From the IMG/VR virus record IMGVR_UViG_3300020477_000990, positions 248,001 to 312,000 of that record: a DNA stretch of 64,000 nt. One strand, written 5' to 3'. Both the position numbers and the translations under genes were made by a program. Below the pieces are notes generated by a model. It was not told where the DNA came from and ran no database searches. It saw nothing but the letters and a program-made list of their open reading frames with translations. Of this stretch, positions 2,903 through 55,584 are shown in pieces (within the stretch, counting starts at the first letter, position 1; every line of letters starts with the position of its first letter).

Positions 2903-3988
2903 ATGAACTATTATAATACTTACAATAGAATCGAAATAGAAATCACTTCAAAATGTAATGCGAGGTGTCCTGGTTGTTCTAGAAATGTAAATGGAATAAC
3001 AAATCCTCAATTACAAGTACAAGATTTATCATCTGAAAATTTTATAAAGTACGTCCCTAAAGAAGCATTAAAAGGAAAAAAGATTGAGTTTTGTGGGGTG
3101 TTTGGTGATCCAGTAATGCACAAAGATTTTATTACTATTGTAGAACATTGCCGATTATCAGAACCTTATTCTATTTCTATAGATACAAATGGTGGATCAC
3201 AGCCAACTAGTTGGTGGGAAAAACTTGCAACACTAGGAGTTGAAGTACAATGGAGTGTTGATGGTCATAGAAAAACAAATCATTTGTATAGAGTAAATGT
3301 AAAGTTTGATAAAATTTTAGAAAATATGAAAGCATTTTCTAAAGCAGGTGGTAAAGGTACATGGGAGTATATTGTATTTGATCATAATGAAAGTGAAATT
3401 AGTATAGCTAAAAAAGAAGCTCATGCTTTAGGTTTTGATTTTAATATTAGAAGAAATAGCAGAAATAATGAAGAAGGTTATATATCATACATTAAAGAAA
3501 AAGTAGCTGGAAAAGTTGTAACTACAAAATTTAAGGTAACACAATCAAATCCAGTACATAAGCATAGTGAAACAGAAACAGCTAAAAAAGAAGTCCAAAA
3601 AGATAATTTGCAAATTAGTTGTTTACTATATAATGATAAAAAAATGTTTTTAGGATTTGATGGACGTATTTGGCCTTGTTGTTGGTTCCATGATATCTAT
3701 AATGGTGCAGGTAATCCACAAGTAGAAGAAACATCACATGAATTAGCAACGCATCATAAACTTAAAAAATTAGATAGTAGGTATGGAGCCGGCTGGAATA
3801 GTATTATACACAATAGTTGGAATGATATATTAGGGCATGAATATTACCAAAAAATATTGCCAAATACATTTGATAGTACTAGCCCTAATTTTTTAAAAGA
3901 AGAAGCATTACCAAAATGTGCAAAAAAATGTAGGAAATCTGGAGCACTACGAGATGTAGAGCGAGTTAAATATATTGGTGATAAATAA
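2903..3988 (+). CDS. radical SAM enzyme with C-terminal SPASM/twitch domain (subfamily A)
   Basis: EITSKCNARCPGC (CxxxCxxC), FCGVFGDP, SVDG..TNHLYR; C-terminal SC...WPCC...C..KC. Confidence 0.85.
   Translation: MNYYNTYNRIEIEITSKCNARCPGCSRNVNGITNPQLQVQDLSSENFIKYVPKEALKGKKIEFCGVFGDPVMHKDFITIVEHCRLSEPYSISIDTNGGSQPTSWWEKLATLGVEVQWSVDGHRKTNHLYRVNVKFDKILENMKAFSKAGGKGTWEYIVFDHNESEISIAKKEAHALGFDFNIRRNSRNNEEGYISYIKEKVAGKVVTTKFKVTQSNPVHKHSETETAKKEVQKDNLQISCLLYNDKKMFLGFDGRIWPCCWFHDIYNGAGNPQVEETSHELATHHKLKKLDSRYGAGWNSIIHNSWNDILGHEYYQKILPNTFDSTSPNFLKEEALPKCAKKCRKSGALRDVERVKYIGDK
3980..3987 (+). promoter_or_regulatory. late promoter GATAAATA, leaderless geometry
   Basis: 5 nt before the ATG at 3993. Confidence 0.5.
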
Positions 3989-3992
3989 TTAT

Positions 3993-4433
3993 ATGAGCTT
4001 AAAAGACGATATTATTAATGGATTAGATAAATCAACAGAGTTTACTGACAGACTCAGTAAATTGGTTCATTTACCAAGATCAGTAGTTAAATCATTAACT
4101 GAACCATTGGGGCTTAAAGATTATATGAGTTTATCTAAAGCAGTTGATGAAGAAGATCCAGAAAGTGCTAAAAAAATATTATTAGATGTTGGATTTAGCA
4201 AATTAGATAATACAACCCAAAAGTTGTTATCTGAATATTCTAGTAAAGGTTCAACTAAAGCAGGAGCTTCGCAATCAGCTGGTAATAGAGATGGAAGAAA
4301 CGATACTGATCCAGAAGAAAAACCAGAACCAGCAGTTGATGATGATACAAAAGATGCAATTAATAAAATAGCTGATAAATCAGCTGAAATTGTACAATTT
4401 GCAGATATAGTTGCAAAAAATAATAAAAAGTAG
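3993..4433 (+). CDS. hypothetical protein
   Basis: ATG at 3993, in frame with the track ORF. Confidence 0.6.
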   Translation: MSLKDDIINGLDKSTEFTDRLSKLVHLPRSVVKSLTEPLGLKDYMSLSKAVDEEDPESAKKILLDVGFSKLDNTTQKLLSEYSSKGSTKAGASQSAGNRDGRNDTDPEEKPEPAVDDDTKDAINKIADKSAEIVQFADIVAKNNKK

Positions 4434-15285: not shown

Positions 15286-15648
15286 ATGACGTATTATGTA
15301 AATGAAAATTGTATAAAATGTAAGCACACAGATTGCGTAGAAGTTTGTCCAGTTGATTGTTTTTATGAAGGTGAAAACTTTCTTGCTATTAAACCTGATG
15401 AATGTATTGATTGTGGAGTCTGTGAACCAGAGTGTCCAGTTGATGCAATAAAAGCCGATACTGATCCAGAGCAACCTAAAGCTGAAATAGATAAATGGGT
15501 TGAGCTAAATACAATGTATGCTAACCAATGGCCCAATATAACAAAAAAGAAAGATGCATTACCTGAAGCAAAAGAATATGATCCAGAAACTTATAAAGAA
15601 GATAAAACATCTTTACTATCTGAAAAGCCAGGTACAGGAGATGAATAA
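15286..15648 (+). CDS. fdxA: 7Fe/8Fe ferredoxin, FdxA type
   Basis: [18 protein letters not shown] and [12 protein letters not shown]. Confidence 0.93.
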
Positions 15649-28954: not shown

Positions 28955-29031
28955 GGAGTGTTAGCTCAACTGGTTAGAGCACCCGCCTGTCACGCGGGAG
29001 GTTGAGGGTTCGAGTCCCTTACACTCCGCCA
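28955..29031 (+). tRNA. tRNA-Asp(GTC)
   Basis: GGAGTGT/ACACTCC acceptor, CCCGC-ctgtcac-GCGGG, CCA. Confidence 0.96.
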
Positions 29032-36442: not shown

Positions 36443-36971
36443 AGAAATTAGTACAAGTATTGATGATAGTTATAGATTAAAGTTAGTTAACTATGCTACC
36501 GAATTAGTATATCATGAAGGTATATCGTCGACATATACGGCAATACATTTTAGTCAAGAATTAGATATTAATAATGAATTATTAAAACCAATAGTTGAAG
36601 ATTTTAAAAAAGCAGTTCCTGATGCATATAACTTAAATATTAGGTTTTTTAAATTTCCACCTTTTGGGTCACAGTTCCCTCATTCAGATTTTAGTATTGC
36701 TACATCAGAAAATGGAAGATCATTTTTAGTACCACTATATCCTGATCCATCTTCAGATTTATATGCTCCATTATTATTTTGGGGTGATGATATTAAAAAA
36801 GTACCATATGATTGGTATAATGAAAGTAAAGCAAAATATGTAGTTCCTAAAATTAAAAATGGATATATAGTTAATATTCATAAAATTCATAGTGTAATGA
36901 ATCATATACCACTACATAGATATAATTTACAAATAAGATTTAATACTAACAATAAGGATATTTTAATATAA
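36420..36971 (+). CDS. 2OG-Fe(II) oxygenase-like protein
   Basis: ATG at 36420; PHSD (HxD)...IHSV...RYNLQIR. Confidence 0.6.
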   Translation: MIHNEYIKEISTSIDDSYRLKLVNYATELVYHEGISSTYTAIHFSQELDINNELLKPIVEDFKKAVPDAYNLNIRFFKFPPFGSQFPHSDFSIATSENGRSFLVPLYPDPSSDLYAPLLFWGDDIKKVPYDWYNESKAKYVVPKIKNGYIVNIHKIHSVMNHIPLHRYNLQIRFNTNNKDILI

Positions 36972-37300
36972 TGGAAAATGAAATAGATAAACCAAAATTA
37001 ACAATATATGCTAAAATTGTTGAAAACTTAAAACAGGTTTATGATCCTGAAATTTCAGTCAATATATATGATTTAGGATTAATATATAATATTGATTTAG
37101 AAAGTTTGCCAAAAGCGACAATAACACATACTCTTACAAGTGCATTTTGTCCAGCGGCAGACCAAATTGTGGCCGATATAAAAGGTGCGGCTGAAACTGT
37201 AGAAGGAGTAGATGCAGTTGAAGTCATTACAACATTTGATCCACCTTTTGGTCCAGATAAAATGTCAGAAGAGGTAAAATTAGCTCTTGGCATTTTCTAA
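36971..37300 (+). CDS. DUF59/SufT/PaaD-like Fe-S assembly protein
   Basis: LKQVYDPEISVNIYDLGLIY, LTSAFCP, FDPP. Confidence 0.9.
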   Translation: MENEIDKPKLTIYAKIVENLKQVYDPEISVNIYDLGLIYNIDLESLPKATITHTLTSAFCPAADQIVADIKGAAETVEGVDAVEVITTFDPPFGPDKMSEEVKLALGIF

Positions 37301-39841: not shown

Positions 39842-40561
39842 ATGGCGTTAGATATATTTCATTTAAGTTACCAAGAGCCTTATGCGGATAAAACTTGGAA
39901 ATCACTTGTAAAAAGGTTTCCTTATGCTAGGCGTGTAAAAGGAATAAAAGGAATTTTTAATGCACACAAACGATGTGCAGAATTGGCTTATACAAAATCT
40001 TTTTATGTGGTTGATGCAGATGCTATATTAGAACCTGATTTTGATTTTAGCTTTAAGCCAAGTAAATGGGATGAACATTGCACTCATGTTTGGCGTTGTA
40101 AAAATCCAATAAATGATTTAGTATATGGTTATGGTGGTGTTAAATTATTTCCTACACAAACTTGTAGATCTGCAAATGAATGGCGAATAGATTTTACAAC
40201 ATCGGTATCAAATAAACCTGGAGAAAAAGGTGCATTTAAGGCAATGCCAACTATTAGTAATGTTACGGCATTTAATACAGATCCTTTTAATACATTTAAA
40301 TCAGCATTTAGAGAATGTACAAAACTAGCGGCAAAGGTAATTGACAAACAAAAAGATCATGAAACCGAGCAAAGATTAAATGTTTGGTGTAGTGTAGGTT
40401 CAGATAAAGGGTTTGGTGAATATGCAATTGCCGGTGCTATTGCCGGTAGAGAATATGGTGAAGCAAATAAAAATAATATGGAGGCATTAAGTAAAATAAA
40501 TGACTTTGGCTGGCTTGAGCAACAGTTCAACAAAATCCAAATCTCATCTAGAAGTACATGA
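39842..40561 (+). CDS. glycosyltransferase-like (GT-A) protein
   Basis: DIFHLSY.EP, NAHKRCA, YVVDADA (DxD), GYGGVKLF. Confidence 0.6.
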   Translation: MALDIFHLSYQEPYADKTWKSLVKRFPYARRVKGIKGIFNAHKRCAELAYTKSFYVVDADAILEPDFDFSFKPSKWDEHCTHVWRCKNPINDLVYGYGGVKLFPTQTCRSANEWRIDFTTSVSNKPGEKGAFKAMPTISNVTAFNTDPFNTFKSAFRECTKLAAKVIDKQKDHETEQRLNVWCSVGSDKGFGEYAIAGAIAGREYGEANKNNMEALSKINDFGWLEQQFNKIQISSRST

Positions 40562-41399
40562 GTTATTAGATAGATTTGAATTATTGTATGATGATGTAAG
40601 TGAATTAAAAGATCTTAGACGTGCTATTCTTGACAAAGATTTATCTAGCATATTTCGTTTAAGTAAGAATTATGACGGATATTTAATTGATGAACTCCGT
40701 AAATCAGTTTTAGAAGAAAATCAATATTCTATACTTAGGTTATTAAAAATTTATGTAAAGAACAAATCGTTAACAACACTAACAAAAACGATTAAAAATT
40801 TTCCTAAAAGTAATATTAAAGATGCATATTCTAGAGGGCAGTTACACAGTAAAAAATGGTTAGTATCTGAAGTTGAAAAAATAGGAATGCATTTAGGTAC
40901 AGTATTTTTGTGTGCTGGCTGGTATGGAACGTTAGCAACAATGCTTTTTGAATCTGAAAAAATACATTTAGATAAAATAAGAAGTTTTGATATTGATCCT
41001 ACGTGTTGGCAAATTGCAGAGTCAATTAATAAACCTTGGGTTATGACTGAATGGAAATTTAAAGCAACTACACAAGACATACATAGTATTAATTTTAACG
41101 AGTATACGTACAAAACATTAAGATCAGATAAAACAGAAAGAGAATTATTTGATAAGCCAAATACAGTTATTAATACAAGTTGTGAACATATTGAAAATTG
41201 GCAAGAATGGTGGAATAAAATTCCTAATGGAAAATTATGTATTTTACAATCAAATGATTATTTTGAATTACCTGAACATATTAATTGTGTTAAAGATGTT
41301 AGCAATTTTAAATCTATAGCACCAATGGCAACTTACCTTTACACTGGCGAATTAATGTTAGGCAAATATACGAGGTATATGCTTATAGGTATTAAGTAA
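40500..41399 (+). CDS. class I SAM-dependent methyltransferase-like protein
   Basis: FLCAGWYG, SFDIDP, VINTSCEH, LQSNDY. Confidence 0.7.
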   Translation: MTLAGLSNSSTKSKSHLEVHELLDRFELLYDDVSELKDLRRAILDKDLSSIFRLSKNYDGYLIDELRKSVLEENQYSILRLLKIYVKNKSLTTLTKTIKNFPKSNIKDAYSRGQLHSKKWLVSEVEKIGMHLGTVFLCAGWYGTLATMLFESEKIHLDKIRSFDIDPTCWQIAESINKPWVMTEWKFKATTQDIHSINFNEYTYKTLRSDKTERELFDKPNTVINTSCEHIENWQEWWNKIPNGKLCILQSNDYFELPEHINCVKDVSNFKSIAPMATYLYTGELMLGKYTRYMLIGIK

Positions 41400-41656
41400 T
41401 GCCAAAGTATGTATATAGATTAAAGTCTAAAGATCAACCAGTTCTTTTTCGTGAAACAGGAAAGTTCATGGAGATTCCAATGGTAGAAGACGAATTAGAA
41501 GTAGTACATCAAATTGAAGAATGGATAAAAGAAAATTGTTCTCAGTCTGCAAGTATAGAATCCTTTGATAATTATGATTATACAGGTAAGGACAAAATTA
41601 CCATTTACTTTAAAAGTAAAGAAGATTTGCTACTTTTTAAGCTCAAGTTTGAGTAG
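41399..41656 (+). CDS. small hypothetical protein
   Basis: 85 aa, coupled. Confidence 0.55.
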   Translation: MPKYVYRLKSKDQPVLFRETGKFMEIPMVEDELEVVHQIEEWIKENCSQSASIESFDNYDYTGKDKITIYFKSKEDLLLFKLKFE

Positions 41657-41667: not shown

Positions 41668-42777
41668 ATGTACAGATATGAAGATATACGAACAGTACAT
41701 TTAGAAATCACAGCGAAATGTCAGGCCGCTTGTTTGCAATGTGATAGAAATGTTAATGGTGGTGAAATAAATCCAAATATTTCACTTGATGAGTTATCTC
41801 TTGAAGATTGCAAAAAAATATTTCCACCTGAATTTGTAAAACAATTAGATAGTTTGTTTATGTGTGGTAATTTAGGTGACCCAGTTATTGCACAAGATTC
41901 ACTTGAAGTAATGGAATATTTACGTAGTCAAAATTCTAATATTTGGTTAAGCATGAATACAAATGCCGGCGCCAAAAAATCAGAGTGGTGGAAAGATTTA
42001 GCAAAAATACTTGGTAAGCAAGGCCATGTAATTTTTAGTTTTGATGGATTAAAAGATACTAATCATTTATATAGGCAAAATGTTAATTGGGATATATGTA
42101 TGGATTCGGCACAGGCGTTTATTGATGCAGGTGGTAGAGCAAGATGGGATTATTTAATATTTGGACATAATCAGCATCAAGTTGAAGATGCAAAAGCATT
42201 ATCAGAACGTATGGGATTTGAAAAATTTATGAGTAAAAAAACTGGTAGATTTTTTAGTAATGTAAAAGCAAAAGGAAAAGAAGAACATCAAGGTGTAAAT
42301 CGTAAAGGTAAACAAACACAAAAACTTACAAAGCCAGATGAAAAATATGTAAACAAAGCTCTTAAGAAAGAAGATTTACTTATAGAAAAATATGGATCTA
42401 TGAATAATTATTATGATAAAGCACATATTAATTGTAAAGTATTAAAAGATATGAATGTATATGTAAGTGCATCAGGACATTTGATGCCTTGTTGTTGGGT
42501 AGCAGGACAAATGTACAAGTGGTGGGAGAAGCCAGGAGAAAATCAAATTTATAGATTTATAGAGCAAGTAGGTGGACTTGATGAGCTATCAGTTTTACAA
42601 CATGGTTTTAAAAAAGTTTTAGAAGGAGACTTTTTTAATAATATAAAAGCAAGTTGGAAAAAAACTTCTTGTAATGGCGGCGATGGAAAATTAAAAGTAT
42701 GTTCTGTTAAATGTGGTACAGAGTTTGATCCATTTGGTGCACAATTTGAAGATAACTTCGTTACAACAGCAAGGTAA
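41668..42777 (+). CDS. radical SAM enzyme with C-terminal SPASM/twitch domain (subfamily A)
   Basis: CQAACLQC, MCGNLGDP, SFDG..TNHLYR, INC...MPCC, CSVKC. Confidence 0.88.
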   Translation: MYRYEDIRTVHLEITAKCQAACLQCDRNVNGGEINPNISLDELSLEDCKKIFPPEFVKQLDSLFMCGNLGDPVIAQDSLEVMEYLRSQNSNIWLSMNTNAGAKKSEWWKDLAKILGKQGHVIFSFDGLKDTNHLYRQNVNWDICMDSAQAFIDAGGRARWDYLIFGHNQHQVEDAKALSERMGFEKFMSKKTGRFFSNVKAKGKEEHQGVNRKGKQTQKLTKPDEKYVNKALKKEDLLIEKYGSMNNYYDKAHINCKVLKDMNVYVSASGHLMPCCWVAGQMYKWWEKPGENQIYRFIEQVGGLDELSVLQHGFKKVLEGDFFNNIKASWKKTSCNGGDGKLKVCSVKCGTEFDPFGAQFEDNFVTTAR

Positions 42778-42786: not shown

Positions 42787-44256
42787 ATGAGCAATAATAA
42801 ACTACCATCAAAAACGTTTTGTGCGTTACCGTGGATGCATTTATCAACTAGACCAGATGGAAATATGCGAGTATGTTGTACAGCTAACGCAAGTTCAGTA
42901 GGTGCAACTAATGATAAAAAGCATGGTGGACAAGTTGGTATTCTAAAAAAAGATAATGGTGTTCCTGCAAACTTAAATAATTCAGATTTAATGTCATCGT
43001 GGAATAATGATTATATGAAGAACGTTCGTTTACAAATGTTAAACGGAGAAAAACCACCAGCTTGTTTAAAATGTTTTAAAGAAGAAGATGCAGGTCATAA
43101 TTCAAAACGTATGTGGGAAACTGAATATTGGATGAATAGATATTCTTTAGAAGATATGATTGGTGAAACAAAAGAAGACGGTTCTATTCCACCTAAAATT
43201 AGATATATTGATTTGCGTATGGGATCTAAATGTAATTTAAAATGTATTATGTGTAGTCCACATGATTCTTCATTATGGGTCAAAGATTGGTTAGACGTAT
43301 ATCCTACAATTAAAAATCCACAGCTAAAGCAAACAATGGGTTGGGATAATAAAGGTAAAGTACATGGCGCTGGTTATAACTGGCATAAAAATAACGAAGT
43401 ATTTTGGAAGCAGTTATATGAGCAAATACCTCATATGTATCAATTATATTTTGCAGGCGGTGAGTCTACAATTATAGAAGAACATTATACATTATTAGAA
43501 GAAGTTATTAGAAGAGGATATGCTCCTAAAATAGAATTACGTTATAATTCAAATGGTGTTGAAATGCCAGATAGATTATTTGAATTATGGAGTCATTTTA
43601 AAAGAGTGCGTTTTCATTATAGTGTAGATTCAATTGAAGAAATGAATCGTTATATACGTTTTCCTGCAGATTGGGATAATACAGTTAAACAATTTCATTT
43701 GTTAGATAATACAGAAGATAAAGTAGAAGTAACAATTGCCTGTGCAGTACAGGCTTTGAATATACATTATATTCCAGATTTTATTAAATGGAAATGGAAA
43801 CAAAATTTTAAAAAAATAAATGTATGGCCATTTGGAGCAGGTATGTTAAATTATCACTTTGTATATTGGCCTGGGCAATTAAATGTAAAAGCATTGCCAC
43901 AATGGATGAAAAATAAAACAAAAGAAAAATATGAAGCATTTTATCCTTGGTTATTAGAAAATTGGAAACTATCCGGTGCACCAAGTAAAGAAGCATTTAT
44001 GGAAGCAAGTTACGGTATTAAAAGATTAAAAGGAATGATTCAATTTATGATGTCAGAAGATTGGTCAAGACGTATGCCAGAATTTAGAGAATATATTACA
44101 AAATTTGATAAGCAACGTGGCACAGATTTTGCTAAAACTTTTCCGGATATGGCTGATATGTTAGATGAGTCATTAGATTATAGTGTTAAACCAATAACCG
44201 GTGAAAGTATTGATGAAAAAACAGAGAAGGAATTAGAAGATGGCGGAACAATCTGA
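42787..44256 (+). CDS. radical SAM enzyme with N-terminal SPASM/twitch domain (subfamily B)
   Basis: FCALPW...RVCC, CLKC, CNLKCIMC, FAGGE, YNSN. Confidence 0.88.
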   Translation: MSNNKLPSKTFCALPWMHLSTRPDGNMRVCCTANASSVGATNDKKHGGQVGILKKDNGVPANLNNSDLMSSWNNDYMKNVRLQMLNGEKPPACLKCFKEEDAGHNSKRMWETEYWMNRYSLEDMIGETKEDGSIPPKIRYIDLRMGSKCNLKCIMCSPHDSSLWVKDWLDVYPTIKNPQLKQTMGWDNKGKVHGAGYNWHKNNEVFWKQLYEQIPHMYQLYFAGGESTIIEEHYTLLEEVIRRGYAPKIELRYNSNGVEMPDRLFELWSHFKRVRFHYSVDSIEEMNRYIRFPADWDNTVKQFHLLDNTEDKVEVTIACAVQALNIHYIPDFIKWKWKQNFKKINVWPFGAGMLNYHFVYWPGQLNVKALPQWMKNKTKEKYEAFYPWLLENWKLSGAPSKEAFMEASYGIKRLKGMIQFMMSEDWSRRMPEFREYITKFDKQRGTDFAKTFPDMADMLDESLDYSVKPITGESIDEKTEKELEDGGTI

Positions 44257-44806
44257 TTTACATAAAAAGTGGGAAGAAATGAAAGACCACGTTACAAAGC
44301 CACGTAAAGAGTTAGATGGTATGGCTATTTGTCCATTTGCTAAAATGGGATTCAAACGTAATGAAGTTGAAGTTAAATGGGTTAAAAAAGATATGTTTAA
44401 AATTGCCAATGAAGCAATTGAAAATTATCCTGAAGAAAAACAGTTAGTATTATGTATTGGAGATCCAAAAGATTATTCATTAGAAGAATTAGAAAAATGG
44501 GAAAATGAAAACCAAGCAAAAGCAGTTGCAAATGATTTATACATTTATACATCTTATAAGTCAGAAGAAAAACAAGGATCAGTAGGAGTTGAAAAAAATA
44601 CAGATAAACTTATTCCTGGATTAGGTTCTGGTAATAAAGGTTTAGCAATCATACAAATACAAGGGTTAAGTGATTTAAATGAAAAATCTGAATGGGTACA
44701 TAGAAATACAAAGTATTATGATAAATGGAATAAAAAATATTATGATGCTATTGTAAAAAGAAGATATAAAGATAGTAACTATGATAGTGAGGAGTTTGAA
44801 AAATAA
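44240..44806 (+). CDS. hypothetical protein with a CPFAK motif
   Basis: 188 aa inside the radical SAM cluster. Confidence 0.55.
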   Translation: MAEQSDLHKKWEEMKDHVTKPRKELDGMAICPFAKMGFKRNEVEVKWVKKDMFKIANEAIENYPEEKQLVLCIGDPKDYSLEELEKWENENQAKAVANDLYIYTSYKSEEKQGSVGVEKNTDKLIPGLGSGNKGLAIIQIQGLSDLNEKSEWVHRNTKYYDKWNKKYYDAIVKRRYKDSNYDSEEFEK

Positions 44807-45888
44807 TGGTTAATAATTACAATAAATTTTTTAGTGATACGTCTCTAGTAAAGTGCTATTCAGAATTTCAACGATTAGAAGAAGTAATTGTTGGTAGTGC
44901 ATATAAACCAGATTGCTTTGATAGTAGTGAGCAATTTAGCCAAGAAGCCAAAGACTTATTAAAAAGAGTGTTTACAGAAACAGCAGAAGATTTAGAAGTA
45001 CTTGTTAGTATATTAAAAGCTGAAGGCATAATAGTACAACGTCCTAAAGTAATGCAAGATCCACTTGCAAAATATAATATGGGAGAATTTGATATTGAAT
45101 ATGCAAACCAACCTTTGCAACCAAGAGATATATTAGGATTTTATGGTAATAAAATTATTGAAGCATACACAAAAGACAGAACAAGATATTTTGAAAATTG
45201 GTGTTCAAGAGATATATTAAAGCAATATTATTTGCGTGGTGCAGAGTGGATAGCAATGCCACCACCACAATTAAATAAAAAAACATACCAAGATTATTAT
45301 CAAAATAGTGAAGTACTTTTTCATAATGCTAACTTAATTAAATGTGGTAAAGATATATTCCATTCACAATCACATCAAAAAGATCCTGTAAAAGGTAAAG
45401 GTACAGAACAAGGTTTAGAATGGTATAAAAAGCAATTGCCAGAATTTACATTTAATGAAATACCTGTTGGAGGTCATGCTGATGGTAAAATTGCATTAAT
45501 TAAACCAGGTTTATTAGTAACTTGGAAAAAAGAATGGATACCAGAAAAGTTAAAATCATGGGATTGTATTATAACAGAATCAGGAACAAAGTTTCCAGAA
45601 GATTTTAAAAAAACACGTAAAGAACATTTTTATAAAGATTATATTGAAAAATGGTTATCGCATTGGATTGGTTATGTTGATGAAACAGTATTTGATGTTA
45701 ATATGTTGAGTATATCAGAAGATAAAGTTATTTGTACAGGAACAGATAAAGAAGTATTTGCAAAATTAGAACAACACGGAGTAACACCTATATATTGGAA
45801 ATTTAGACATCAATATTTTTGGGATGGCGGAGTACATTGTTTAACAGCAGATGTAAGACGTAAAGGAGAACAGGAAAATTATTTCTAA
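44806..45888 (+). CDS. amidinotransferase (pentein fold; Gly/inosamine-phosphate amidinotransferase-like)
   Basis: LEEVIVG, QPRD, GHADG, DVNML, GGVHCLT catalytic Cys. Confidence 0.85.
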   Translation: MVNNYNKFFSDTSLVKCYSEFQRLEEVIVGSAYKPDCFDSSEQFSQEAKDLLKRVFTETAEDLEVLVSILKAEGIIVQRPKVMQDPLAKYNMGEFDIEYANQPLQPRDILGFYGNKIIEAYTKDRTRYFENWCSRDILKQYYLRGAEWIAMPPPQLNKKTYQDYYQNSEVLFHNANLIKCGKDIFHSQSHQKDPVKGKGTEQGLEWYKKQLPEFTFNEIPVGGHADGKIALIKPGLLVTWKKEWIPEKLKSWDCIITESGTKFPEDFKKTRKEHFYKDYIEKWLSHWIGYVDETVFDVNMLSISEDKVICTGTDKEVFAKLEQHGVTPIYWKFRHQYFWDGGVHCLTADVRRKGEQENYF

Positions 45889-47171
45889 TGGACAATCAAG
45901 CATGGAAGAAACGTGATTGGGATTGGCACAAAACAATCACTAAAAAATGTGTAGCACCTTGGCATAGTTTAACTATCGAATGGGATGGTGAAGTATATGC
46001 TGATGCTGTGGCGTTTAAACCATATGGAAGTATATATGAAAATACTTTAACTGAATTATGGAATTCTCCAAAAGCAGTTAATCTTCGTAAATCATGGAGC
46101 AAAGGATTGCCAGATAATATAATATGTGCTAGTTGTATAAAGAAAGAAGAAACAGTAGGTAGTTCTAGACGACAATACTTTTATAGAAATTTGCCATCTG
46201 AATTATTAAAAACAGCAACATATGATCCAGAGCAAAAACCTAATATATGGTATTTAGAAATTAACTCATCAAATAAATGTAATTTAAAATGTAGAATGTG
46301 TAATGGGCAAGTTTCAAGTACTTGGATTAAAGAAGAAACACAATTAGCAAAAATATCTCCTAGTTGGATGCCAAAAAGAAAAAATGGAAAATACTCTAGA
46401 GTTGATTTTGATGTTATTAAAAATGTTTTAGAAAAAAGAGAATATTTTAAAGATTTGCAATTTTTAAAGTTAACAGGCGGTGAGCCATTAATGGAAGAAC
46501 AAAATTATCAATTAATGGAACAATTTATTGAATGGGATATTGCAAAAAATGTTATGCTTGATATTAACACTAACGGAACATTTATGAATGAAAGATTAAT
46601 AAACATTGCTAAACATTTTAAATTAGTTAAGTTACATATAAGTTTAGAAGGAACAGGAGAGTTATATCAATATATACGTGGTGGAGAAAACTTTACTTTA
46701 GATCAATTAGAAACAAATATAATTGAATTCAACAAGTTACCAAATACAGTAATAATTTATACTGTTACAGTACAAATATATAATATTTTTAATTTATCAG
46801 ATATATGGAATTGGTATTTAAAAATAAGAAAACCAACTAATGAAATTTATTTTAAAAATGTTGTAGTTAATCCTCCACATTTAAATTTTCAAATATTACC
46901 TAATAGTTTAAAGTTAGAAGCATATGAAATAATGAAACAAGCAGATTTACCACAAGGTGAGTATTGGGAATTAGATGATTTTAGTCAAGGTGATATAGGA
47001 TTTAGCAATATTATGAAGAATTTACAGAATCTAAATACATATAACGAGCAACGTTTAAAAGAGTTTGTCCAGTTTACACGTGATATTGATACTATAAGAA
47101 AAACGGATATTAAAAAAATTGTCCCGCAATTAGCAGGATTATTTGAGGAAGTATATGAAGCAAGAGCCTAA
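45888..47171 (+). CDS. radical SAM enzyme, subfamily B
   Basis: CVAPW, CASC, CNLKCRMC, TGGEPL, INTNGT, SLEG...YIRG. Confidence 0.87.
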   Translation: MDNQAWKKRDWDWHKTITKKCVAPWHSLTIEWDGEVYADAVAFKPYGSIYENTLTELWNSPKAVNLRKSWSKGLPDNIICASCIKKEETVGSSRRQYFYRNLPSELLKTATYDPEQKPNIWYLEINSSNKCNLKCRMCNGQVSSTWIKEETQLAKISPSWMPKRKNGKYSRVDFDVIKNVLEKREYFKDLQFLKLTGGEPLMEEQNYQLMEQFIEWDIAKNVMLDINTNGTFMNERLINIAKHFKLVKLHISLEGTGELYQYIRGGENFTLDQLETNIIEFNKLPNTVIIYTVTVQIYNIFNLSDIWNWYLKIRKPTNEIYFKNVVVNPPHLNFQILPNSLKLEAYEIMKQADLPQGEYWELDDFSQGDIGFSNIMKNLQNLNTYNEQRLKEFVQFTRDIDTIRKTDIKKIVPQLAGLFEEVYEARA

Positions 47172-48372
47172 AACATTTTGTATTTTGCCATGGATGCATT
47201 TAGCAACAAATTCTAGTGGAAATTATAGAGTATGTTGTAATTCAACTCCAGGTAAAAATTTTATTTTAGATAAAAATGGTGAGCCTTATAAAATTTATAA
47301 AGCTGATATTAAAGAAATGTGGAACTCTGAAACATATAGAAATTTACGTTTGCAACTACTTAAAGAAGAATATCCAGATATGTGTCAACGTTGCTGGAGA
47401 GAAGAAGCAAGTGATATTAAATCTGCTCGTCAAAGTTTTAACGAAGCATATTCACATTTTATTGATGGAGCATTATCAAATACAGATATAGAAGGTAAAG
47501 CACCATTAAAAGTAGGGTATGTTGATTTACGTTTAGGAAACTTATGTAATTTAAAATGTCGTATGTGTAATCCATGGGCAAGTAACCAATGGACTAAAGA
47601 ATGGAATAAAACAACATCATATGATGGTAAAGATATACCAGAAGATGAACGTACGAGATTAGAGCATATGGATTGGCCCACAAATGAAAAAACGTGGGAA
47701 AACTTAATGCCAATTATAGATTCAGTAGAAGAAATTTACTTAACAGGTGGAGAACCTACATTAGCATTAGAACAATATAAGTTATTTGATAAATGTATTG
47801 AATTAGACAAAGCAAAAGATATTGTATTAAAGTATAATACTAATTTAACTAATATACCACCTAAAATGATTGAGTATTGGAAAAACTTTAAAAAGATTAA
47901 GATTAATGCTTCAATAGATGGGTTTGATGAGCTTAATAGATATATTAGGTATCCAACAAATTGGAAGTCAGTTGATAAAAATCTTAAAATATTTCATGAA
48001 ATAGAAAAAGAAGGTAAAATGAGAGTGCAGATTCATACTACTGTACAATTATATAATATACTTGATATAACAGATTTATTTGAATATGTTGATCAGTTTG
48101 GTTATTTTCCGTATTTAAATATATTAGATCATCCAGATTACTTAAATGTAAGAGTGTTGCCATTGCACCTTAAAGAATGTGTAGCAGAAGAATTACAAAA
48201 GTATATTGATAAGCCAAAAGTAAAAGGGTTAATAACTTATATGATGGACGAAGATTGGTCACAGCATACAGATAAATTTATTGAATATACTAATTGGCTA
48301 GATAAATCACGTAAGCAAAATGTTCTTGATATTGTTCCTGGATTAGAAGACATAATAAATTTAAAAAAATAA
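47155..48372 (+). CDS. radical SAM enzyme, subfamily B
   Basis: ATG at 47155 after GAGGA; FCILPW...RVCC, CQRC, CNLKCRMC, TGGEP, YNTN, SIDG. Confidence 0.88.
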   Translation: MKQEPKTFCILPWMHLATNSSGNYRVCCNSTPGKNFILDKNGEPYKIYKADIKEMWNSETYRNLRLQLLKEEYPDMCQRCWREEASDIKSARQSFNEAYSHFIDGALSNTDIEGKAPLKVGYVDLRLGNLCNLKCRMCNPWASNQWTKEWNKTTSYDGKDIPEDERTRLEHMDWPTNEKTWENLMPIIDSVEEIYLTGGEPTLALEQYKLFDKCIELDKAKDIVLKYNTNLTNIPPKMIEYWKNFKKIKINASIDGFDELNRYIRYPTNWKSVDKNLKIFHEIEKEGKMRVQIHTTVQLYNILDITDLFEYVDQFGYFPYLNILDHPDYLNVRVLPLHLKECVAEELQKYIDKPKVKGLITYMMDEDWSQHTDKFIEYTNWLDKSRKQNVLDIVPGLEDIINLKK

Positions 48373-48435: not shown

Positions 48436-48657
48436 ATGTTCAAATACTTTGTAAAACATTTTAGCCAAGCATTATTGTTTTTATTAGCAATAGTTGGCTT
48501 TGCATGGCTTGGAGTTGAAATTGGCAAATTTGTAGGTGGCCAATTACAAAACGAATCATATACACATATTGTTTCTATTGGATTTATATTTTTAGTAGGA
48601 ATAGTATATTATGCATATGGTCAAGCAAAGATTGATATAAAATATCAATCCAAATAA
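48436..48657 (+). CDS. small two-TM membrane protein
   Basis: two hydrophobic helices; GAGG SD. Confidence 0.65.
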   Translation: MFKYFVKHFSQALLFLLAIVGFAWLGVEIGKFVGGQLQNESYTHIVSIGFIFLVGIVYYAYGQAKIDIKYQSK

Positions 48658-54225: not shown

Positions 54226-54592
54226 TAAACTTACACAATGGGGATCTTTAATCGGTGTTATTTGTGCTATCGGTGGTGGATTTTATGCTTGGGGTGAATT
54301 TAATACAAGATTAGCAAATATTGAAAGTAGACCAGTTGCTGACATGACATCTATAACTGAAGATGTAGCAAATTTAAAAGTAGATATGGTTGATAGAATT
54401 ACTGCTATTGAAGATAAACTTGAAGCACAATCAGATACAGAATTAGGTACAATCCAAGCCGACATTAGTGAAATAAAAGACTCACTAGTTAAAGCATTAA
54501 AAGATATCGAGATTCAAAGTAAAGTAAATGAATTGCAAGATCAAAAAATTGAACAAGTAAGATTAAAAGCAACAAATCCATTAGCAAATTAA
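54212..54592 (+). CDS. single-TM coiled-coil protein
   Basis: N-terminal TM WGSLIGVICAIGGGFYAWG, then heptads. Confidence 0.65.
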   Translation: MNVINKLTQWGSLIGVICAIGGGFYAWGEFNTRLANIESRPVADMTSITEDVANLKVDMVDRITAIEDKLEAQSDTELGTIQADISEIKDSLVKALKDIEIQSKVNELQDQKIEQVRLKATNPLAN

Positions 54593-55584
54593 ATTTCAGC
54601 GAATGTATGTTGTTTTTTTCCAAAGTGAGAACAACTCTTTTGACATCTTGACAAGAACATAGGATGGTTTTCATTCCAACTATCTTTTAGTATTTGTGAG
54701 AACCATTCATGATCTAATATATCTTGAATATCATGTTCAAGTGAATTATTCCAATTAGAACTATATTTAGAAAATTTTTCAGACATATCATCACGTTTGT
54801 ACCAATTATTATCATACAAATAACAACAAGGCCAAATTTGATAATTAGCACCAAAGTAAATTTCACCTTCATGTATTAGTTTACATTTTATATTTAAATT
54901 TTTAGTTTCGTTTTTAATTTCAGGATGTTGATATTTTTTATTTGTTAAAGATACTTTGTTTATAACTTCTTTAGTTTTTTTATTAACTACAGTATGCGTA
55001 CTTTCTTGTTTCATAGAATAACGTAGTGAAAATTTAAATCCAAGTTTAGTAGATAGTTGTTGTGCTTTTTCTATATCATCGATATTATGATCAAATGGAT
55101 TATAAACCCATTGTCCTTTGCCACCAGCATCAGAATATGCAGTCATATTTTCTACAAGTTTATTCCAATTAACACCAACTCTATAAATGTGATTTGTATT
55201 TTCAAAGCCATCTACACAAAAACGCATATCTAATTTTGGATTGTCTTTGCTAATTGCTCCTAGTTCTGCCCAATATTCTTTTGAACGCAATCCACCGTTA
55301 GTAGAAACAATTATAACCTTTGGATTCATAGATAATGTGTATTCACATATTTCTATAAATTCTTGATTTACTAATGGATCGCCTAAAACACCACAATAAA
55401 AAATTTCTTTGTTTTCTATATATTCTTTTGAGTGTAATACTTTTTTATAGTTTTCTAGAGTAATATCAGCTAATTCTACATCTGGGTTAGTTTCCCCTTT
55501 TAATGTTCTAGCACACCCAGGACATCTAGCATTACATCTAGTGGTTAATTCTACTTCTATTTTCTTAAGATTTTGTACGAGCAT
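54589..55584 (-). CDS. radical SAM enzyme with C-terminal SPASM/twitch domain (subfamily A)
   Basis: ELTTRCNARCPGC, YCGVLGDP, CVDG..TNHIYR, IKC...WPCC, CQKSC. Confidence 0.87.
   Translation of the reverse strand: MLVQNLKKIEVELTTRCNARCPGCARTLKGETNPDVELADITLENYKKVLHSKEYIENKEIFYCGVLGDPLVNQEFIEICEYTLSMNPKVIIVSTNGGLRSKEYWAELGAISKDNPKLDMRFCVDGFENTNHIYRVGVNWNKLVENMTAYSDAGGKGQWVYNPFDHNIDDIEKAQQLSTKLGFKFSLRYSMKQESTHTVVNKKTKEVINKVSLTNKKYQHPEIKNETKNLNIKCKLIHEGEIYFGANYQIWPCCYLYDNNWYKRDDMSEKFSKYSSNWNNSLEHDIQDILDHEWFSQILKDSWNENHPMFLSRCQKSCSHFGKKQHTFAEI

What the first reader, a model, noticed from the sequence alone, without database searches (positions are those of the whole stretch)
2903..55584. Eight radical-SAM/SPASM enzymes in two subfamilies within 64 kb of a phage
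Seen: CxxxCxxC at 2903, 24569, 29300, 41668 and 54589(-) with a shared (C/G)G..(G/D)DP motif, S/A/C-x-DG..TN..YR and a C-terminal C...PCC...C..C domain (subfamily A). The proteins at 42787, 45888 and 47155 instead have an N-terminal C..PW domain and GGE (subfamily B). Established: SPASM/twitch radical SAM enzymes act on peptides, proteins and sugars (anSME, BtrN). Inference: a paralog expansion that modifies several sites or substrates.
Basis: partly seen in the sequence, partly recalled or inferred. Interest (0 to 1): 0.8.

Follow-up and report, generated by a model that had tools for sequence, protein, structure and literature searches.

The report
Phage radical-SAM sugar-tailoring gene cassette
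A 328 kb marine phage really does carry eight iron-sulfur "radical SAM" enzymes of two related types, part of a widespread uncharacterised phage gene cassette that probably tailors sugars; its function has never been tested.

Summary
The window encodes eight radical-SAM enzymes in two families, A×5 and B×3. No other plausible ORF carries CxxxCxxC. The genome is a 328 kb IMG/VR viral contig related to marine T4-like myoviruses.

Refinements:
- The short A2 is a genuinely split gene. Its Cys domain is a separate overlapping 94-aa ORF, confirmed in three independent metagenomes.
- B2 belongs to a conserved 3-Cys subtype.
- The accessory domains are twitch-like, with one auxiliary cluster. They are not full SPASM domains.
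- B is NCBIfam NF033640. A has no curated family.

This is not a private expansion. A and B co-occur in about 70 of 89 loci examined, nearly all viral, in a recurrent order: c10-c9-GT8-like×2-c6-c1-c2(methyltransferase fold)-c3(74 aa)-A-A-B-B-PP-loop-B-third rSAM-B. The window holds a fragmented version.

In bacteria, mainly Bdellovibrionota, the same rSAMs form arrays. In five of seven contexts these sit beside glycosyltransferases and nucleotide-sugar enzymes, and one locus has an rSAM-GT2 fusion. In the cultured phage RsoM2USA the cassette follows the tail genes.

Best reading, at moderate confidence: radical tailoring of sugars in a phage-built glycan. Rivals are protein/RiPP modification and DNA-glycan modification. 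No member has a characterised relative.

The parts
2903..3988 (+). A1: subfamily A radical-SAM enzyme (361 aa). Core plus C-terminal twitch-like Cys domain (C240, C259, C260, C339, C343).
   Evidence: Pfam Radical_SAM 46.8 bits. A-HMM 438.9 bits. AF2 pLDDT 89.9. Z 15-18.5 to SkfB, SuiB, DesII, MoaA, BlsE, anSME and BtrN. The orthologue in relative L009 is only 61% identical while its neighbours are 75-98%.
24569..25258 (+). A2a: subfamily A radical-SAM core only (229 aa). First half of a split gene.
   Evidence: Pfam Radical_SAM 38 bits. A-HMM 172.4 bits. It ends in the linker just before the Cys domain. A metatranscriptome contig covers 24576-24728.
25248..25532 (+). A2b: 94-aa ORF encoding the subfamily A twitch-like Cys domain (MSINCK...PCC...C-x3-C). 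It overlaps A2a by 11 nt in another frame.
   Evidence: Pfam SPASM E 3.9e-4, 21.1 bits against a 21.5-bit cut-off. A-HMM 41.6 bits. Junction sequence read directly. Contigs from three independent studies cross the junction without indels.
29002..29295 (+). c3: small conserved cassette protein, about 74-81 aa. The likely true start is the ATG at 29050, after tRNA-Asp. It sits directly upstream of A3.
   Evidence: c3-HMM 116.8 bits. The family is present in 39 of 89 loci. It lies between c2 and an A gene: c2 upstream in 30 of 39 and A downstream in 26 of 39. Fusions to c1 and to an A-type Cys domain exist.
29300..30352 (+). A3: subfamily A radical-SAM enzyme (350 aa).
   Evidence: Pfam Radical_SAM 31.8 bits. 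A-HMM 436.4 bits. Cys at 251, 270, 271, 332 and 336.
39842..40561 (+). c1 (P239): virus-specific cassette protein with an invariant D58-x-D60 and a YG.GG.K motif. Function unknown.
   Evidence: The most frequent partner of the rSAMs, in 61 of 89 loci. c1-HMM 355 bits. No Pfam, PHROG or PDB match. Both c1 and c2 match the same 756-aa viral protein in the Atlas, suggesting a c1-c2 fusion. 41.6% identical to RsoM2USA gp348.
40500..41399 (+). c2 (P299): cassette protein with a class I SAM-methyltransferase fold.
   Evidence: Present in 59 of 89 loci. Atlas structural neighbours are Methyltransf_11, _25 and _31 families at TM 0.5-0.64. c2-HMM 357.6 bits.
41399..41656 (+). 85-aa ORF between c2 and A4, in the position that c3 occupies in the canonical cassette. 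Unrelated to c3 by HMM.
   Evidence: ORF list. No family hit. No c3-HMM hit.
41668..42777 (+). A4: subfamily A radical-SAM enzyme (369 aa). First rSAM of the core cluster.
   Evidence: A-HMM 378.2 bits. Pfam Radical_SAM only 18 bits, below the cut-off. 84% identical orthologue in L007 and 61% in L022.
42787..44256 (+). B1: subfamily B radical-SAM enzyme (489 aa) with an N-terminal twitch domain (C12, C30, C31, C93, C96).
   Evidence: NCBIfam NF033640 425.4 bits against a 170-bit cut-off. Pfam SPASM 23 bits at residues 12-96.
44240..44806 (+). 188-aa protein of unknown function inside the cluster. Conserved in relative L006 as a 185-aa gene.
   Evidence: Synteny. Only a weak phrog_10325 hit.
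44806..45888 (+). 360-aa protein of the amidinotransferase / arginine-deiminase fold. It ends in GGVHCLT.
   Evidence: phrog_25854 at 2.7e-27. Atlas feature hits score 0.92-0.93 to inosamine-phosphate amidinotransferase / ADI / DDAH clusters. Structural neighbours of its top Atlas cluster reach TM 0.67-0.84 to amidinotransferase-type clusters. Syntenic in L006.
45888..47171 (+). B2: subfamily B radical-SAM enzyme (427 aa) of a conserved subtype with 3 Cys in the twitch domain (C21, C80, C83; no CC pair).
   Evidence: NF033640 265.8 bits. The 3-Cys pattern is shared by all its closest homologues in both phages and Bdellovibrionota.
47143..48372 (+). B3: subfamily B radical-SAM enzyme (409 aa).
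   Evidence: NF033640 402.7 bits. More than 3,855 homologous clusters, mostly marine. AF2 pLDDT 89.5.
48436..48657 (+). 73-aa hydrophobic protein that follows B3. Conserved in close relatives.
   Evidence: Sequence. Syntenic 73-aa gene in L006 and L007. Forms a cluster found in 5 loci.
54589..55584 (-). A5: subfamily A radical-SAM enzyme (331 aa). It is the only one of the eight on the minus strand.
   Evidence: A-HMM 418.4 bits. Pfam Radical_SAM 25.2 bits, below the cut-off. Cys at 234, 253, 254, 314 and 318.
15286..15648 (+). Ferredoxin (2x[4Fe-4S]/7Fe type). A possible electron donor for the rSAM clusters.
   Evidence: Pfam DUF3470, Fer4 and Fer4_7. The role as reductant is inferred.
36971..37300 (+). 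Fe-S cluster assembly protein (FeS_assembly_P / DUF59 type), upstream of the core cluster.
   Evidence: Pfam PF01883 62.2 bits. The syntenic relative L006 additionally has a NifU gene there.

Best explanation
The eight genes are functional twitch-class radical-SAM enzymes. Each has the SAM-cleaving [4Fe-4S] cluster plus one auxiliary cluster. The auxiliary cluster sits at the C-terminus in family A and at the N-terminus in family B.

They belong to an ancient, widespread and uncharacterised cassette of tailed phages. The cassette combines glycosyltransferase-like proteins (GT8-like c7 and the D-x-D protein c1), a methyltransferase-fold protein (c2), a 74-aa adaptor protein (c3), a PP-loop ATPase (c5), nucleotide-sugar enzymes, and 2 to 10 or more rSAMs of families A, B and C.

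Most likely mechanism: each rSAM abstracts a hydrogen atom from a specific position of a sugar, either in a nucleotide-sugar or in a glycan under construction. The outcome would be oxidation, epimerisation, deoxygenation, decarboxylation or C-C chemistry of the kind known for BtrN, DesII, BlsE and SpeY. The paralogues would then diversify one phage-made glycan at several positions. The glycan is probably displayed on the virion tail or host-recognition apparatus, or on the infected cell's envelope.

What is shown: enzyme class, cassette architecture, co-occurrence and genomic contexts. What is inferred: the carbohydrate substrate, the reaction types and the carrier of the glycan. The phage's own ferredoxin and Fe-S assembly protein would support these enzymes; that link is also inferred.
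For: Enzyme class:
- CxxxCxxC, GGE-type motif and conserved auxiliary Cys.
- Confident models with the rSAM barrel, a beta-hairpin-CC and a helix-CxxC module.
- Z 15-18.5 to SPASM/twitch enzymes.

Cassette:
- A and B co-occur in about 70 of 89 loci examined (mostly viral), with up to 10 rSAMs in 17 kb.
- The gene order recurs.
- The partners are c7 ~ glycogenin/GT8, c5 ~ PP-loop, c11 = nucleotide-sugar dehydrogenase at 159.6 bits, c2 with a methyltransferase fold, and an amidinotransferase-fold gene in the window's own cluster.

Cellular contexts of the same rSAM families:
- GT2-GT2-B-B in Bdellovibrionia.
- SIS / cytidylyltransferase / carbamoyltransferase-B-...-GT2-rSAM-DegT in Halobacteriovorax.
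- GT4-AsnB-like-A-A-c8-B×5-c4-B×2-GT28-[rSAM-GT2 fusion] in a Parcubacteria genome.
- Deoxysugar genes + GT4 + B-B + EryCIII-type glycosyltransferases in Acidobacteria.
- FkbM methyltransferase-B-GT4-GT2 in Bryobacteraceae.

Phage location:
- In RsoM2USA the cassette gp355-gp347 directly follows the tail sheath and virion-protein genes on the same strand (PMC8504454).
- In pelagimyophages, rSAM cassettes lie in the host-recognition cluster with GT8 enzymes (PMC7029224).
- Cyanophage S-SCSM2R has a sugar aminotransferase, an rSAM and an inosamine amidinotransferase together (PMC12801897).

Other:
- A1 evolves much faster than its neighbours, 61% against 75-98% identity. This fits an arms-race surface function.
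- A ferredoxin and FeS_assembly_P are encoded in the window.
Against: - No member of family A, B or C is characterised.
- Structure comparison does not separate sugar-modifying from peptide-modifying relatives. SkfB and SuiB score as high as DesII and BlsE.
- The GT8 and PP-loop assignments rest on weak profile hits (E about 1e-3). c1 has no detectable fold relative.
- Two of seven cellular contexts have no glycosyltransferase nearby.
- In the window itself no GT8-like gene is present, and the cluster is not next to structural genes.
- A highly conserved small protein (c3) sits exactly where RiPP precursors usually sit.
- A PqqD-domain protein occurs near B in one bacterial locus.
- Guilt by association cannot reveal the actual substrate.
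Confidence: 0.45

Rival explanations
1. Protein or peptide maturation (RiPP-like). The rSAMs would install cross-links, epimerisations or other modifications. The target would be the conserved 74-aa protein c3, with its variable C-terminal tail after an invariant GPG, or phage or host proteins such as virion proteins. The methyltransferase and glycosyltransferase-like proteins would add further decorations, in the manner of mycofactocin or proteusin pathways.
For: - c3 lies between c2 and the first A gene in 30 of 39 cases and directly upstream of A3 in the window.
- Its most variable part is the C-terminal tail.
- The best structural matches of A1 include the peptide maturases SkfB and SuiB at Z 18.5, and anSME.
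- Weak NCBIfam hits point to many peptide maturases.
- A PqqD-domain protein lies near B in Bryobacteraceae.
Against: - Neither A nor B has an RRE/PqqD domain. A begins at the cluster motif, residues 17-19. B's N-terminal domain is the twitch domain. No PqqD hit was found among the window's neighbours.
- c3 is far more conserved than the enzymes (mean column identity 71% against 33%) and contains no Cys.
- c3 is fused to c1 and to an A-type Cys domain in some genomes, as an adaptor or subunit would be.
- c3 is absent from nearly all bacterial rSAM arrays, so it cannot be the general substrate.
- Most known twitch-type (single auxiliary cluster) enzymes act on small molecules (own knowledge).
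Confidence: 0.2
2. DNA hypermodification. The cassette would build and tailor a sugar or other adduct on phage DNA bases as an anti-restriction device. The rSAMs would tailor the DNA-linked glycan or its nucleotide-sugar donor.
For: - Phage glycosyltransferases related to LPS and teichoic-acid enzymes do glycosylate 5hmC or 5hoC in DNA, with mono- to trisaccharides, and they co-occur with UDP-sugar biosynthesis genes (10.1101/2023.12.21.572611; PMC13326640).
- The cassette includes a nucleotide-sugar dehydrogenase, a methyltransferase-fold protein and a QueC-like PP-loop protein (Cap9 hit).
- The window has a PTPS/QueD-like gene and a duplicated 2OG-oxygenase-like protein next to the cluster.
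Against: - No C5-cytosine methyltransferase, TET/JBP, thymidylate-synthase homologue or DpdA was found among the window ORFs that were scanned, or in the cassette.
- The papers on DNA glycosylation do not mention radical SAM (zero occurrences).
- The bacterial contexts are classical surface-glycan or glycoside clusters.
- In RsoM2USA the cassette sits in the tail module.
- The QueE scores are negligible.
Confidence: 0.12
3. Small-molecule or cofactor biosynthesis unrelated to a displayed glycan. Examples would be an aminocyclitol or nucleoside-type metabolite (antibiotic-like), a lipid modification, or the maturation of host or phage metalloenzymes. Several of the eight genes could also have unrelated functions.
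For: - An amidinotransferase (StrB1-like fold) lies inside the cluster.
- The best sequence-profile PDB hits of family A include the lipid enzyme GDGT-MAS and the nucleoside-antibiotic enzyme BlsE.
- The best NCBIfam hit is the tungsten-cofactor oxidoreductase maturase, but only at 36-60 bits against a 380-bit cut-off.
- In Acidobacteria the B-B pair lies in a polyketide-glycoside gene cluster.
- A1, A2, A3 and A5 are dispersed among metabolic genes in the window.
Against: - All these similarities are far below family cut-offs.
- The recurrent fixed gene order of A and B with GT-like partners argues for one shared pathway.
- The cassette's position in structural or host-recognition modules is unexpected for a diffusible metabolite.
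Confidence: 0.12

Closest known systems
NCBIfam NF033640 'twitch domain-containing radical SAM protein' (N_Twi_rSAM)
   Same: B1, B2 and B3 match end to end at 425, 266 and 403 bits, above the 170-bit cut-off. They have an N-terminal C-x17-CC...CxxC domain followed by the rSAM core.
   Different: The family is only a bioinformatic definition with no known substrate. B2 and its orthologues form a 3-Cys subtype without the CC pair.
Twitch radical-SAM enzymes acting on sugars and nucleotides: BtrN, DesII, SpeY, BlsE, MoaA
   Same: They share the partial TIM barrel plus one auxiliary-cluster module (beta-hairpin and helix). Z is 15.4-17.5 for A1. BlsE is the top Foldseek hit for A1 and third for B3. 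The genomic company is sugar enzymes and glycosyltransferases.
   Different: Sequence identity is only 13-18%. HMM scores are far below every family cut-off. The Cys pattern differs: family A has 5 conserved Cys including a CC pair. In family B the module is at the N-terminus.
SPASM peptide/protein maturases: SkfB, SuiB, anSME, PqqE, MftC
   Same: Structural similarity is equal or slightly higher, at Z 15.5-18.5. A small conserved ORF (c3) sits next to the enzymes.
   Different: There is no RRE domain. There is no second auxiliary cluster, because the CX2CX5CX3C motif is absent. c3 is over-conserved, sometimes fused to the enzymes, and missing from bacterial arrays.
Multi-rSAM sets reported in phages: the T4-like marine genome TARA_ERS488813_N000010 with 12 rSAM genes, pelagimyophage rSAM cassettes, and Campylobacter CP220-group phages
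   Same: The phenomenon is the same: many rSAM genes in large myovirus genomes, with Fe-S assembly genes (PMC5332604) and in host-recognition islands (PMC7029224). CP220 and F379 carry distant family A homologues at 25% identity.
   Different: Those papers only counted or mentioned the genes. Neither of the two papers read here described the A/B families, the fixed cassette order, the partners c1, c2 and c3, or the link to bacterial glycan clusters.
Ralstonia jumbo phage RsoM2USA gp347-gp355
   Same: It carries the left arm of the cassette with one B-type rSAM: c10-c9-c7-c7-c6-c1-B-c1-c2. It is a cultured phage.
   Different: It has a single rSAM, no A gene and no c3. All nine genes are annotated as hypothetical. 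The host is a soil bacterium, not a marine one.

Membership tests
Radical SAM superfamily (PF04055) | CxxxCxxC motif for the SAM-binding [4Fe-4S] cluster | tested here: met
   One motif is present in each of the eight proteins. C18, C22, C25 (family A) and C135, C139, C142 (family B) are invariant in 42-44 homologues.
Radical SAM superfamily (PF04055) | Pfam score at or above the 29.5-bit gathering cut-off | tested here: inconclusive
   Met by A1 (46.8), A2 (38.0), A3 (31.8), B1 (29.5), B2 (46.7) and B3 (51.0). A4 (18.0) and A5 (25.2) are below it. A4 and A5 nevertheless score 378 and 418 bits on the family A profile.
Radical SAM superfamily (PF04055) | Partial (beta/alpha)6 TIM-barrel fold | tested here: met
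   The AF2 models of A1 and B3 have pLDDT about 90. A1 aligns to solved rSAM enzymes at Z 10-18.5. B3 was compared only by Foldseek, at TM 0.3-0.56.
Radical SAM superfamily (PF04055) | Reductive cleavage of SAM to a 5'-deoxyadenosyl radical | not testable with these tools
   This needs anaerobic biochemistry.
NF033640 N_Twi_rSAM (subfamily B) | Full-length HMM score above the 170-bit cut-off | tested here: met
   B1 425.4, B2 265.8 and B3 402.7 bits, covering profile positions 1-4 to 397 of 398. Family A members score only 39-45 bits.
NF033640 N_Twi_rSAM (subfamily B) | N-terminal twitch-like Cys domain preceding the rSAM core | tested here: met
   Pfam SPASM hits at residues 12-96, 21-83 and 13-85, at 23.0, 35.5 and 32.7 bits against a 21.5-bit cut-off. 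C13, C81 and C84 are invariant and C31/C32 are at least 90% conserved. B2 has 3 Cys.
SPASM domain proper (two auxiliary clusters) | Seven-Cys pattern including CX2CX5CX3C | tested here: not met
   Family A has 5 conserved Cys (C-x18-CC-x~78-C-x3-C). Family B has 3-5. No CX2CX5CX3C motif is present in any of the eight.
Twitch subclass (one auxiliary cluster: BtrN/MoaA type) | Beta-hairpin plus helix module carrying 3-4 Cys ligands next to the barrel | tested here: met
   A1 model: strands 247-250 and 255-257, then C259/C260, with helix 337-343 carrying C339 and C343. B3 model: strands 19-22 and 27-29, then C31/C32, with helix 79-89 carrying C81 and C84. Binding of an actual cluster cannot be tested here.
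   MoaA at most 34 bits (cut-off 284). QueE at most 21.6 bits (cut-offs 200-260). NrdG2 15.8 bits (cut-off 131).
RiPP rSAM maturases | RiPP recognition element (PqqD-like), fused or adjacent | tested here: not met
   There is no room for one in family A, where the motif starts at residue 17-19. There is no PqqD hit in any scanned neighbour or cassette partner.
RiPP rSAM maturases | Adjacent precursor peptide with a conserved leader and a variable core | tested here: inconclusive
   c3 is adjacent and has a variable tail. However, it is over-conserved, is fused to enzymes in some genomes, and is absent from bacterial arrays.
Glycan / nucleotide-sugar tailoring rSAMs (functional class, not a sequence family) | Conserved genomic association with glycosyltransferases and nucleotide-sugar enzymes | tested here: met
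   Five of seven bacterial contexts, including an rSAM-GT2 fusion. Phage partners c7 (GT8-like) and c11 (NDP-sugar dehydrogenase). Two contexts lack glycosyltransferases.
Glycan / nucleotide-sugar tailoring rSAMs (functional class, not a sequence family) | Activity on a carbohydrate substrate | not testable with these tools
   This needs enzyme assays.

The most novel reading that the evidence does not exclude
Tailed phages, from marine T4-like myoviruses to jumbo phages, and predatory Bdellovibrionota share an undescribed multi-enzyme pathway. In it, arrays of 2 to 10 or more twitch radical-SAM paralogues (families A, B and C) rewrite individual sugar positions of a glycan. The glycan would be assembled by GT8-like and c1 transferases, organised by a 74-aa adaptor (c3). 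Phages would display it on the tail or host-recognition apparatus, or possibly on DNA. This would amount to a combinatorial 'radical glycan editing' system that generates surface diversity in an arms race. Family B would have arisen from family A-type genes by circular permutation in tandem arrays.
Probability: 0.3. Interest if true: 0.8.

Novelty: new variant of a known kind. Interest (0 to 1): 0.6.

Why it matters
Radical-SAM enzymes perform some of the hardest chemistry in biology. Only a handful are known to act on carbohydrates, and each of those is a single enzyme in an antibiotic pathway.

This study found a cassette that stacks up to ten such enzymes with glycosyltransferase-like proteins. 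It recurs in hundreds of viral contigs and in predatory bacteria, and it is abundant in the ocean: the B3 family alone has more than 3,800 sequence clusters. If the carbohydrate reading is right, the cassette is a large untapped reservoir of sugar-editing chemistry and a previously unrecognised layer of phage surface or host-recognition diversity.

The work also turns a vague literature remark ('phages have many radical SAM genes') into a defined, testable module. The module now has named parts, a cultured model (RsoM2USA gp347-gp355) and clear alternative hypotheses.

Tried and rejected
1. Housekeeping identities (MoaA, QueE, NrdG, viperin, anSME, PqqE, tungsten-cofactor maturase). All NCBIfam scores are 5-20 times below the cut-offs.
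2. A 7-deazaguanine pathway, suggested by the PTPS/QueD-like gene at 21701-22153 and the QueC-like PP-loop protein c5. No QueE-like rSAM, DpdA or true QueC was found. The window's PP-loop protein is an NAD synthase.
3. A2 as a truncated pseudogene or an assembly error. Rejected because its Cys domain is an intact overlapping ORF, and three independent assemblies cross the junction without indels.
4. B2 as a degenerate copy. Rejected because its 3-Cys pattern is conserved in its whole orthologous group.
5. A recent lineage-specific expansion. Rejected for the clustered genes.
6. A NifU gene in the window upstream of FeS_assembly_P, as in relative L006. The window ORF 36393-36971 has no NifU signature. 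It looks like an HxD...H oxygenase.
7. Structure-based function transfer. Foldseek and VIA-align against PDB, and Foldseek against AFDB-SwissProt, give only generic SPASM/twitch matches.
8. PDB profile searches for c1, c3, c10 and the 864-aa protein. Nothing meaningful came back. The c3 hits are designed repeat proteins.
9. DNA similarity to cultured phages. Only tRNA matches were found.
10. Circular permutation of A and B. The Cys domains align in register but only at P about 0.002 and probability 14%. I kept this as an idea and do not treat it as a finding.

Full report
**Observation.** The window is 31% G+C and almost all of its genes are on the + strand. Each has a single CxxxCxxC motif, close to the N-terminus in five of them (subfamily A: 2903, 24569, 29300, 41668 and 54589 on the minus strand) and after a domain of about 130 aa in three (subfamily B: 42787, 45888, 47143). 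All hit Pfam Radical_SAM, although A4 and A5 fall below the gathering score. A six-frame scan finds only one other CxxxCxxC in an ORF of at least 80 aa, in a short antisense ORF. Within-family identity is 28-39% for A and 28-31% for B. The A and B cores are homologous at 97% hhalign probability.

**Refinement 1: A2 is a split gene.** The 229-aa ORF ends in the variable linker. An overlapping ORF in another frame (25248-25532; ATG TCG ATT AAT TGC overlapping ...GTC GAT TAA) encodes MSINCK...PCC...C-x3-C, which is the subfamily A Cys domain. Contigs assembled from three independent studies (2021-2024) cross the junction without any indel. The nearby variants are synonymous or conservative. The split is therefore a real feature of the phage population and suggests a two-subunit enzyme. 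A metatranscriptome contig covers part of A2a, but DNA carry-over cannot be excluded.

**Refinement 2: B2 has three Cys.** B2 has only three Cys in its N-terminal domain. All its closest homologues share this pattern, in phages and in Bdellovibrionota alike, so it is a conserved subtype. It resembles the 3-Cys auxiliary cluster of MoaA (own knowledge).

**Refinement 3: the accessory domains are twitch-like.** They have 3-5 Cys and lack the CX2CX5CX3C motif, so they are not full SPASM domains.

**What kind of genome.** B3 matches a 328,149-bp IMG/VR contig at 100% identity. The window corresponds to roughly 248-312 kb of that contig. The first protein in the window (DUF6267 / phrog_455) is shared with 124 cultured marine T4-like myoviruses. 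The window also encodes:
- EF-G, IF3, ribosomal proteins L11 and S21, and six tRNAs;
- DnaK, ClpX, ClpP, ClpS and Hsp20;
- class I ribonucleotide reductase, DNA ligase, PRPP synthetase and a GMP-reductase-like protein;
- NAD synthase, AdoMet decarboxylase and a SbmA/BacA-like transporter;
- a ferredoxin and an Fe-S assembly protein.

It is a 'huge phage' with a rich auxiliary gene set. The same DNA is found in many marine metagenomes from 2014 to 2024.

**Family assignment.** B1, B2 and B3 are full-length members of NCBIfam NF033640 ('twitch domain-containing radical SAM protein'), at 425, 266 and 403 bits against a cut-off of 170. This family has no known function. Subfamily A reaches no curated cut-off. 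Its best hit is the tungsten-cofactor maturase model at 36-60 bits against 380. MoaA, QueE and NrdG are excluded.

**Structure.** The AlphaFold models of A1 and B3 are confident (pLDDT about 90). Both show the rSAM barrel plus a beta-hairpin-CC and helix-CxxC module. Comparison with solved and predicted structures returns only the generic SPASM/twitch class: SkfB, SuiB, DesII, MoaA, BlsE, anSME, PqqE and BtrN at Z 15-18.5 for A1. Peptide-modifying and sugar-modifying enzymes are not separated.

**Not a private expansion but a cassette.**
- A profile of subfamily A finds more than 514 stretches in IMG/VR.
- In the 80 fetched loci plus the earlier ones, A and B co-occur in about 70 of 89. Up to ten rSAMs lie in 17 kb, for example L059 with 4A+6B and L066 with 3A+6B.
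- Clustering the neighbours shows that the window's two genes upstream of A4 are the commonest partners: 39842-40561 (c1) in 61 of 89 loci and 40500-41399 (c2) in 59 of 89. Next comes a 74-aa protein (c3) in 39 of 89, whose window copy sits directly upstream of A3.
- A canonical order recurs: c10-c9-c7-c7-c6-c1-(c1)-c2-c3-A-A-B-B-c5-B-c4-x-B-(c8).
- The window holds a fragmented version: c3+A3 at 29 kb; c1-c2-[85 aa]-A4-B1-[188 aa]-[360 aa]-B2-B3-[73 aa] at 39.8-48.7 kb; and A1, A2a/b and A5 as solitary genes.
- A relative at 68-84% identity (L006) keeps the core cluster in the same order, preceded by NifU, FeS_assembly_P, aldehyde dehydrogenase and ClpP.
- The clustered genes have 19-109 external homologues that score above their best in-window paralogue, so the paralogues are ancient.

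**Identity of the partners.** Almost all lack Pfam, PHROG and NCBIfam matches.

| Partner | Best assignment | Support |
|---|---|---|
| c2 | class I methyltransferase fold | |
| c1 | virus-only family with invariant D-x-D; both c1 and c2 match one 756-aa viral protein | |
| c7 | weakly but consistently resembles glycogenin/GT8 | |
| c5 | invariant SGGxDS PP-loop and a C-terminal Cys motif | |
| c11 | nucleotide-sugar dehydrogenase | |
| c4 | a third rSAM family, absent from the window | |
| window 360-aa gene | amidinotransferase fold | |
| c3 | 63 clusters among 1.84 billion representatives | |

c3 is much more conserved than the enzymes and has no Cys. It is found fused to c1, to an A-type Cys domain and to an unknown domain. 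It therefore behaves like an adaptor or subunit.

**Cellular relatives and their company.** The closest cellular B homologues are mostly in Bdellovibrionota, often on Mb-scale contigs, as 'B-B-c4' units or as arrays of up to nine copies. I obtained precomputed Pfam annotation of the neighbours for seven loci. In five of them the rSAMs sit among glycosyltransferases and sugar enzymes:
- GT2-GT2-B-B;
- SIS / cytidylyltransferase / carbamoyltransferase-B...NTP-transferase-GT2...rSAM-DegT;
- GT4-AsnB-like-A-A-c8-B×5-c4-B×2-GT28, followed by an rSAM-GT2 fusion protein;
- deoxysugar genes, GT4, B-B and EryCIII-type glycosyltransferases in a polyketide cluster;
- FkbM methyltransferase-B-GT4-GT2.

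The other two loci are uninformative. The phage contig L001 likewise has UDP-glucose dehydrogenase, carbamoyltransferase and a cytidylyltransferase-like gene, with flavodoxin near its rSAMs.

**Position in phage genomes.** Ralstonia jumbo phage RsoM2USA is the only phage in the cultured-phage collection that matched c1. It has gp355(c10)-gp354(c9)-gp353/352(c7)-gp351(c6)-gp350(c1)-gp349(B)-gp348(c1)-gp347(c2). This block lies directly downstream of the MS-confirmed tail sheath ORF359 and virion protein ORF356, on the same strand (PMC8504454). [quoted passage not shown] A marine T4-like genome with 12 rSAM genes and Fe-S assembly genes has been noted (PMC5332604). A cyanophage carries a sugar aminotransferase, an rSAM and an inosamine amidinotransferase side by side (PMC12801897). 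The A1 orthologue in a close relative is only 61% identical while the flanking proteins are 75-98% identical, as expected for a fast-evolving interface function.

**Interpretation.**
- Shown: eight intact twitch-class rSAM genes; membership of B in NF033640; a conserved viral cassette with defined partners; and the association of these rSAM families with glycosyltransferases and nucleotide-sugar enzymes in bacteria.
- Inferred: that the substrates are sugars or glycans; that the paralogues act at different positions; and that the glycan is displayed on the virion tail or host-recognition apparatus, or on the cell envelope.
- I give this explanation 0.45.

Rivals:
- RiPP-like modification of proteins or peptides, with c3 as candidate substrate, at 0.2. 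It is weakened by the absence of any RRE, by c3's over-conservation and fusions, and by its absence from bacterial arrays.
- Tailoring of a DNA-linked glycan at 0.12. This is known chemistry in phages, but no DNA-modification hallmark genes were seen.
- Unrelated small-molecule or cofactor roles at 0.12.

**Novelty.** That large marine phages carry many rSAM genes is already in the literature. To my knowledge the following are not: the two families, the fixed cassette and its partners, the split A2, the 3-Cys B2 subtype, the Bdellovibrionota link, and the carbohydrate context. No member is characterised. I rate it a new variant of a known kind (twitch rSAM enzymes) with interest 0.6.

Noticed in passing
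window 18007-20076, 20839-21261, 26793-27350, 27381-27713; tRNAs at 13721, 28800-29031, 48664, 62507: The phage encodes EF-G, ribosomal proteins L11 and S21, IF3 and six tRNAs. This is a substantial translation gene set, typical of 'huge phages'.
   Followed up: partly
window 25525-26796, 30760-31224, 31253-33145, 35108-35431, 39018-39629: A full proteostasis set is present: ClpX, Hsp20, DnaK, ClpS and ClpP. ClpP lies just upstream of the core rSAM cluster, in the window and in relative L006.
   Followed up: partly
window 35447-36442: A SbmA/BacA-like inner-membrane peptide transporter (Pfam 452 bits) is encoded by the phage. This is unusual for a virus.
   Followed up: no
window 48763-51357 and 36393-36971: An 864-aa protein right after the cluster contains an internally duplicated module with HxD...H motifs (weak 2OG-FeII_Oxy_3 hit, E 0.0018). 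It has no PDB or PHROG relative. The 192-aa ORF upstream of FeS_assembly_P also shows an HxD...H pattern. It occupies the position where the relative L006 has NifU.
   Followed up: partly
window 13831-14454, 15286-15648, 21701-22153, 27682-28476, 28433-28801: Several metabolic genes are scattered among the dispersed A genes: a nitroreductase, a ferredoxin, a PTPS/QueD-like protein, NAD synthase and an AdoMet decarboxylase.
   Followed up: partly
L169 17737-19338 (Parcubacteria MAG, 1.27 Mb contig): A 533-aa protein combines a radical-SAM domain with GT2 glycosyltransferase domains. It lies at the end of an 11-rSAM array. This is a Rosetta-stone link between these rSAMs and glycosyl transfer.
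   Followed up: partly
L090-L166 (genome-contig scan): The closest cellular homologues of subfamily B are concentrated in predatory Bdellovibrionota, including Bacteriovoracaceae and Halobacteriovorax. Arrays reach up to 9 copies (L098). The pattern-based scan favours close relatives, so the true range is wider.
   Followed up: partly
L091 6801-7910 (- strand; Bdellovibrionia, 917 kb contig): An A-like gene here is in two pieces. A 137-aa ORF with weak A-HMM similarity lies upstream of a 231-aa rSAM core. This could be an intermediate in an A (core-twitch) to B (twitch-core) permutation.
   Followed up: no
L009 3661-4815 versus window 2903-3988: In a closely related phage, all neighbours are 75-98% identical to the window's proteins. 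The A1 orthologue is only 61% identical, so it is evolving much faster.
   Followed up: partly
L001/L002 (181 kb and 75 kb marine contigs): Another marine phage-like contig combines 4 rSAMs with flavodoxin, an Asp/Arg hydroxylase, a fatty-acid desaturase, a SET-domain protein, UDP-glucose dehydrogenase and a carbamoyltransferase.
   Followed up: no
window 7322-8590: A 422-aa protein has an Mtd_N (major tropism determinant N-terminal) domain. It may be a receptor-binding or tail-fibre-like protein and is the only structural-looking gene seen in the window.
   Followed up: no
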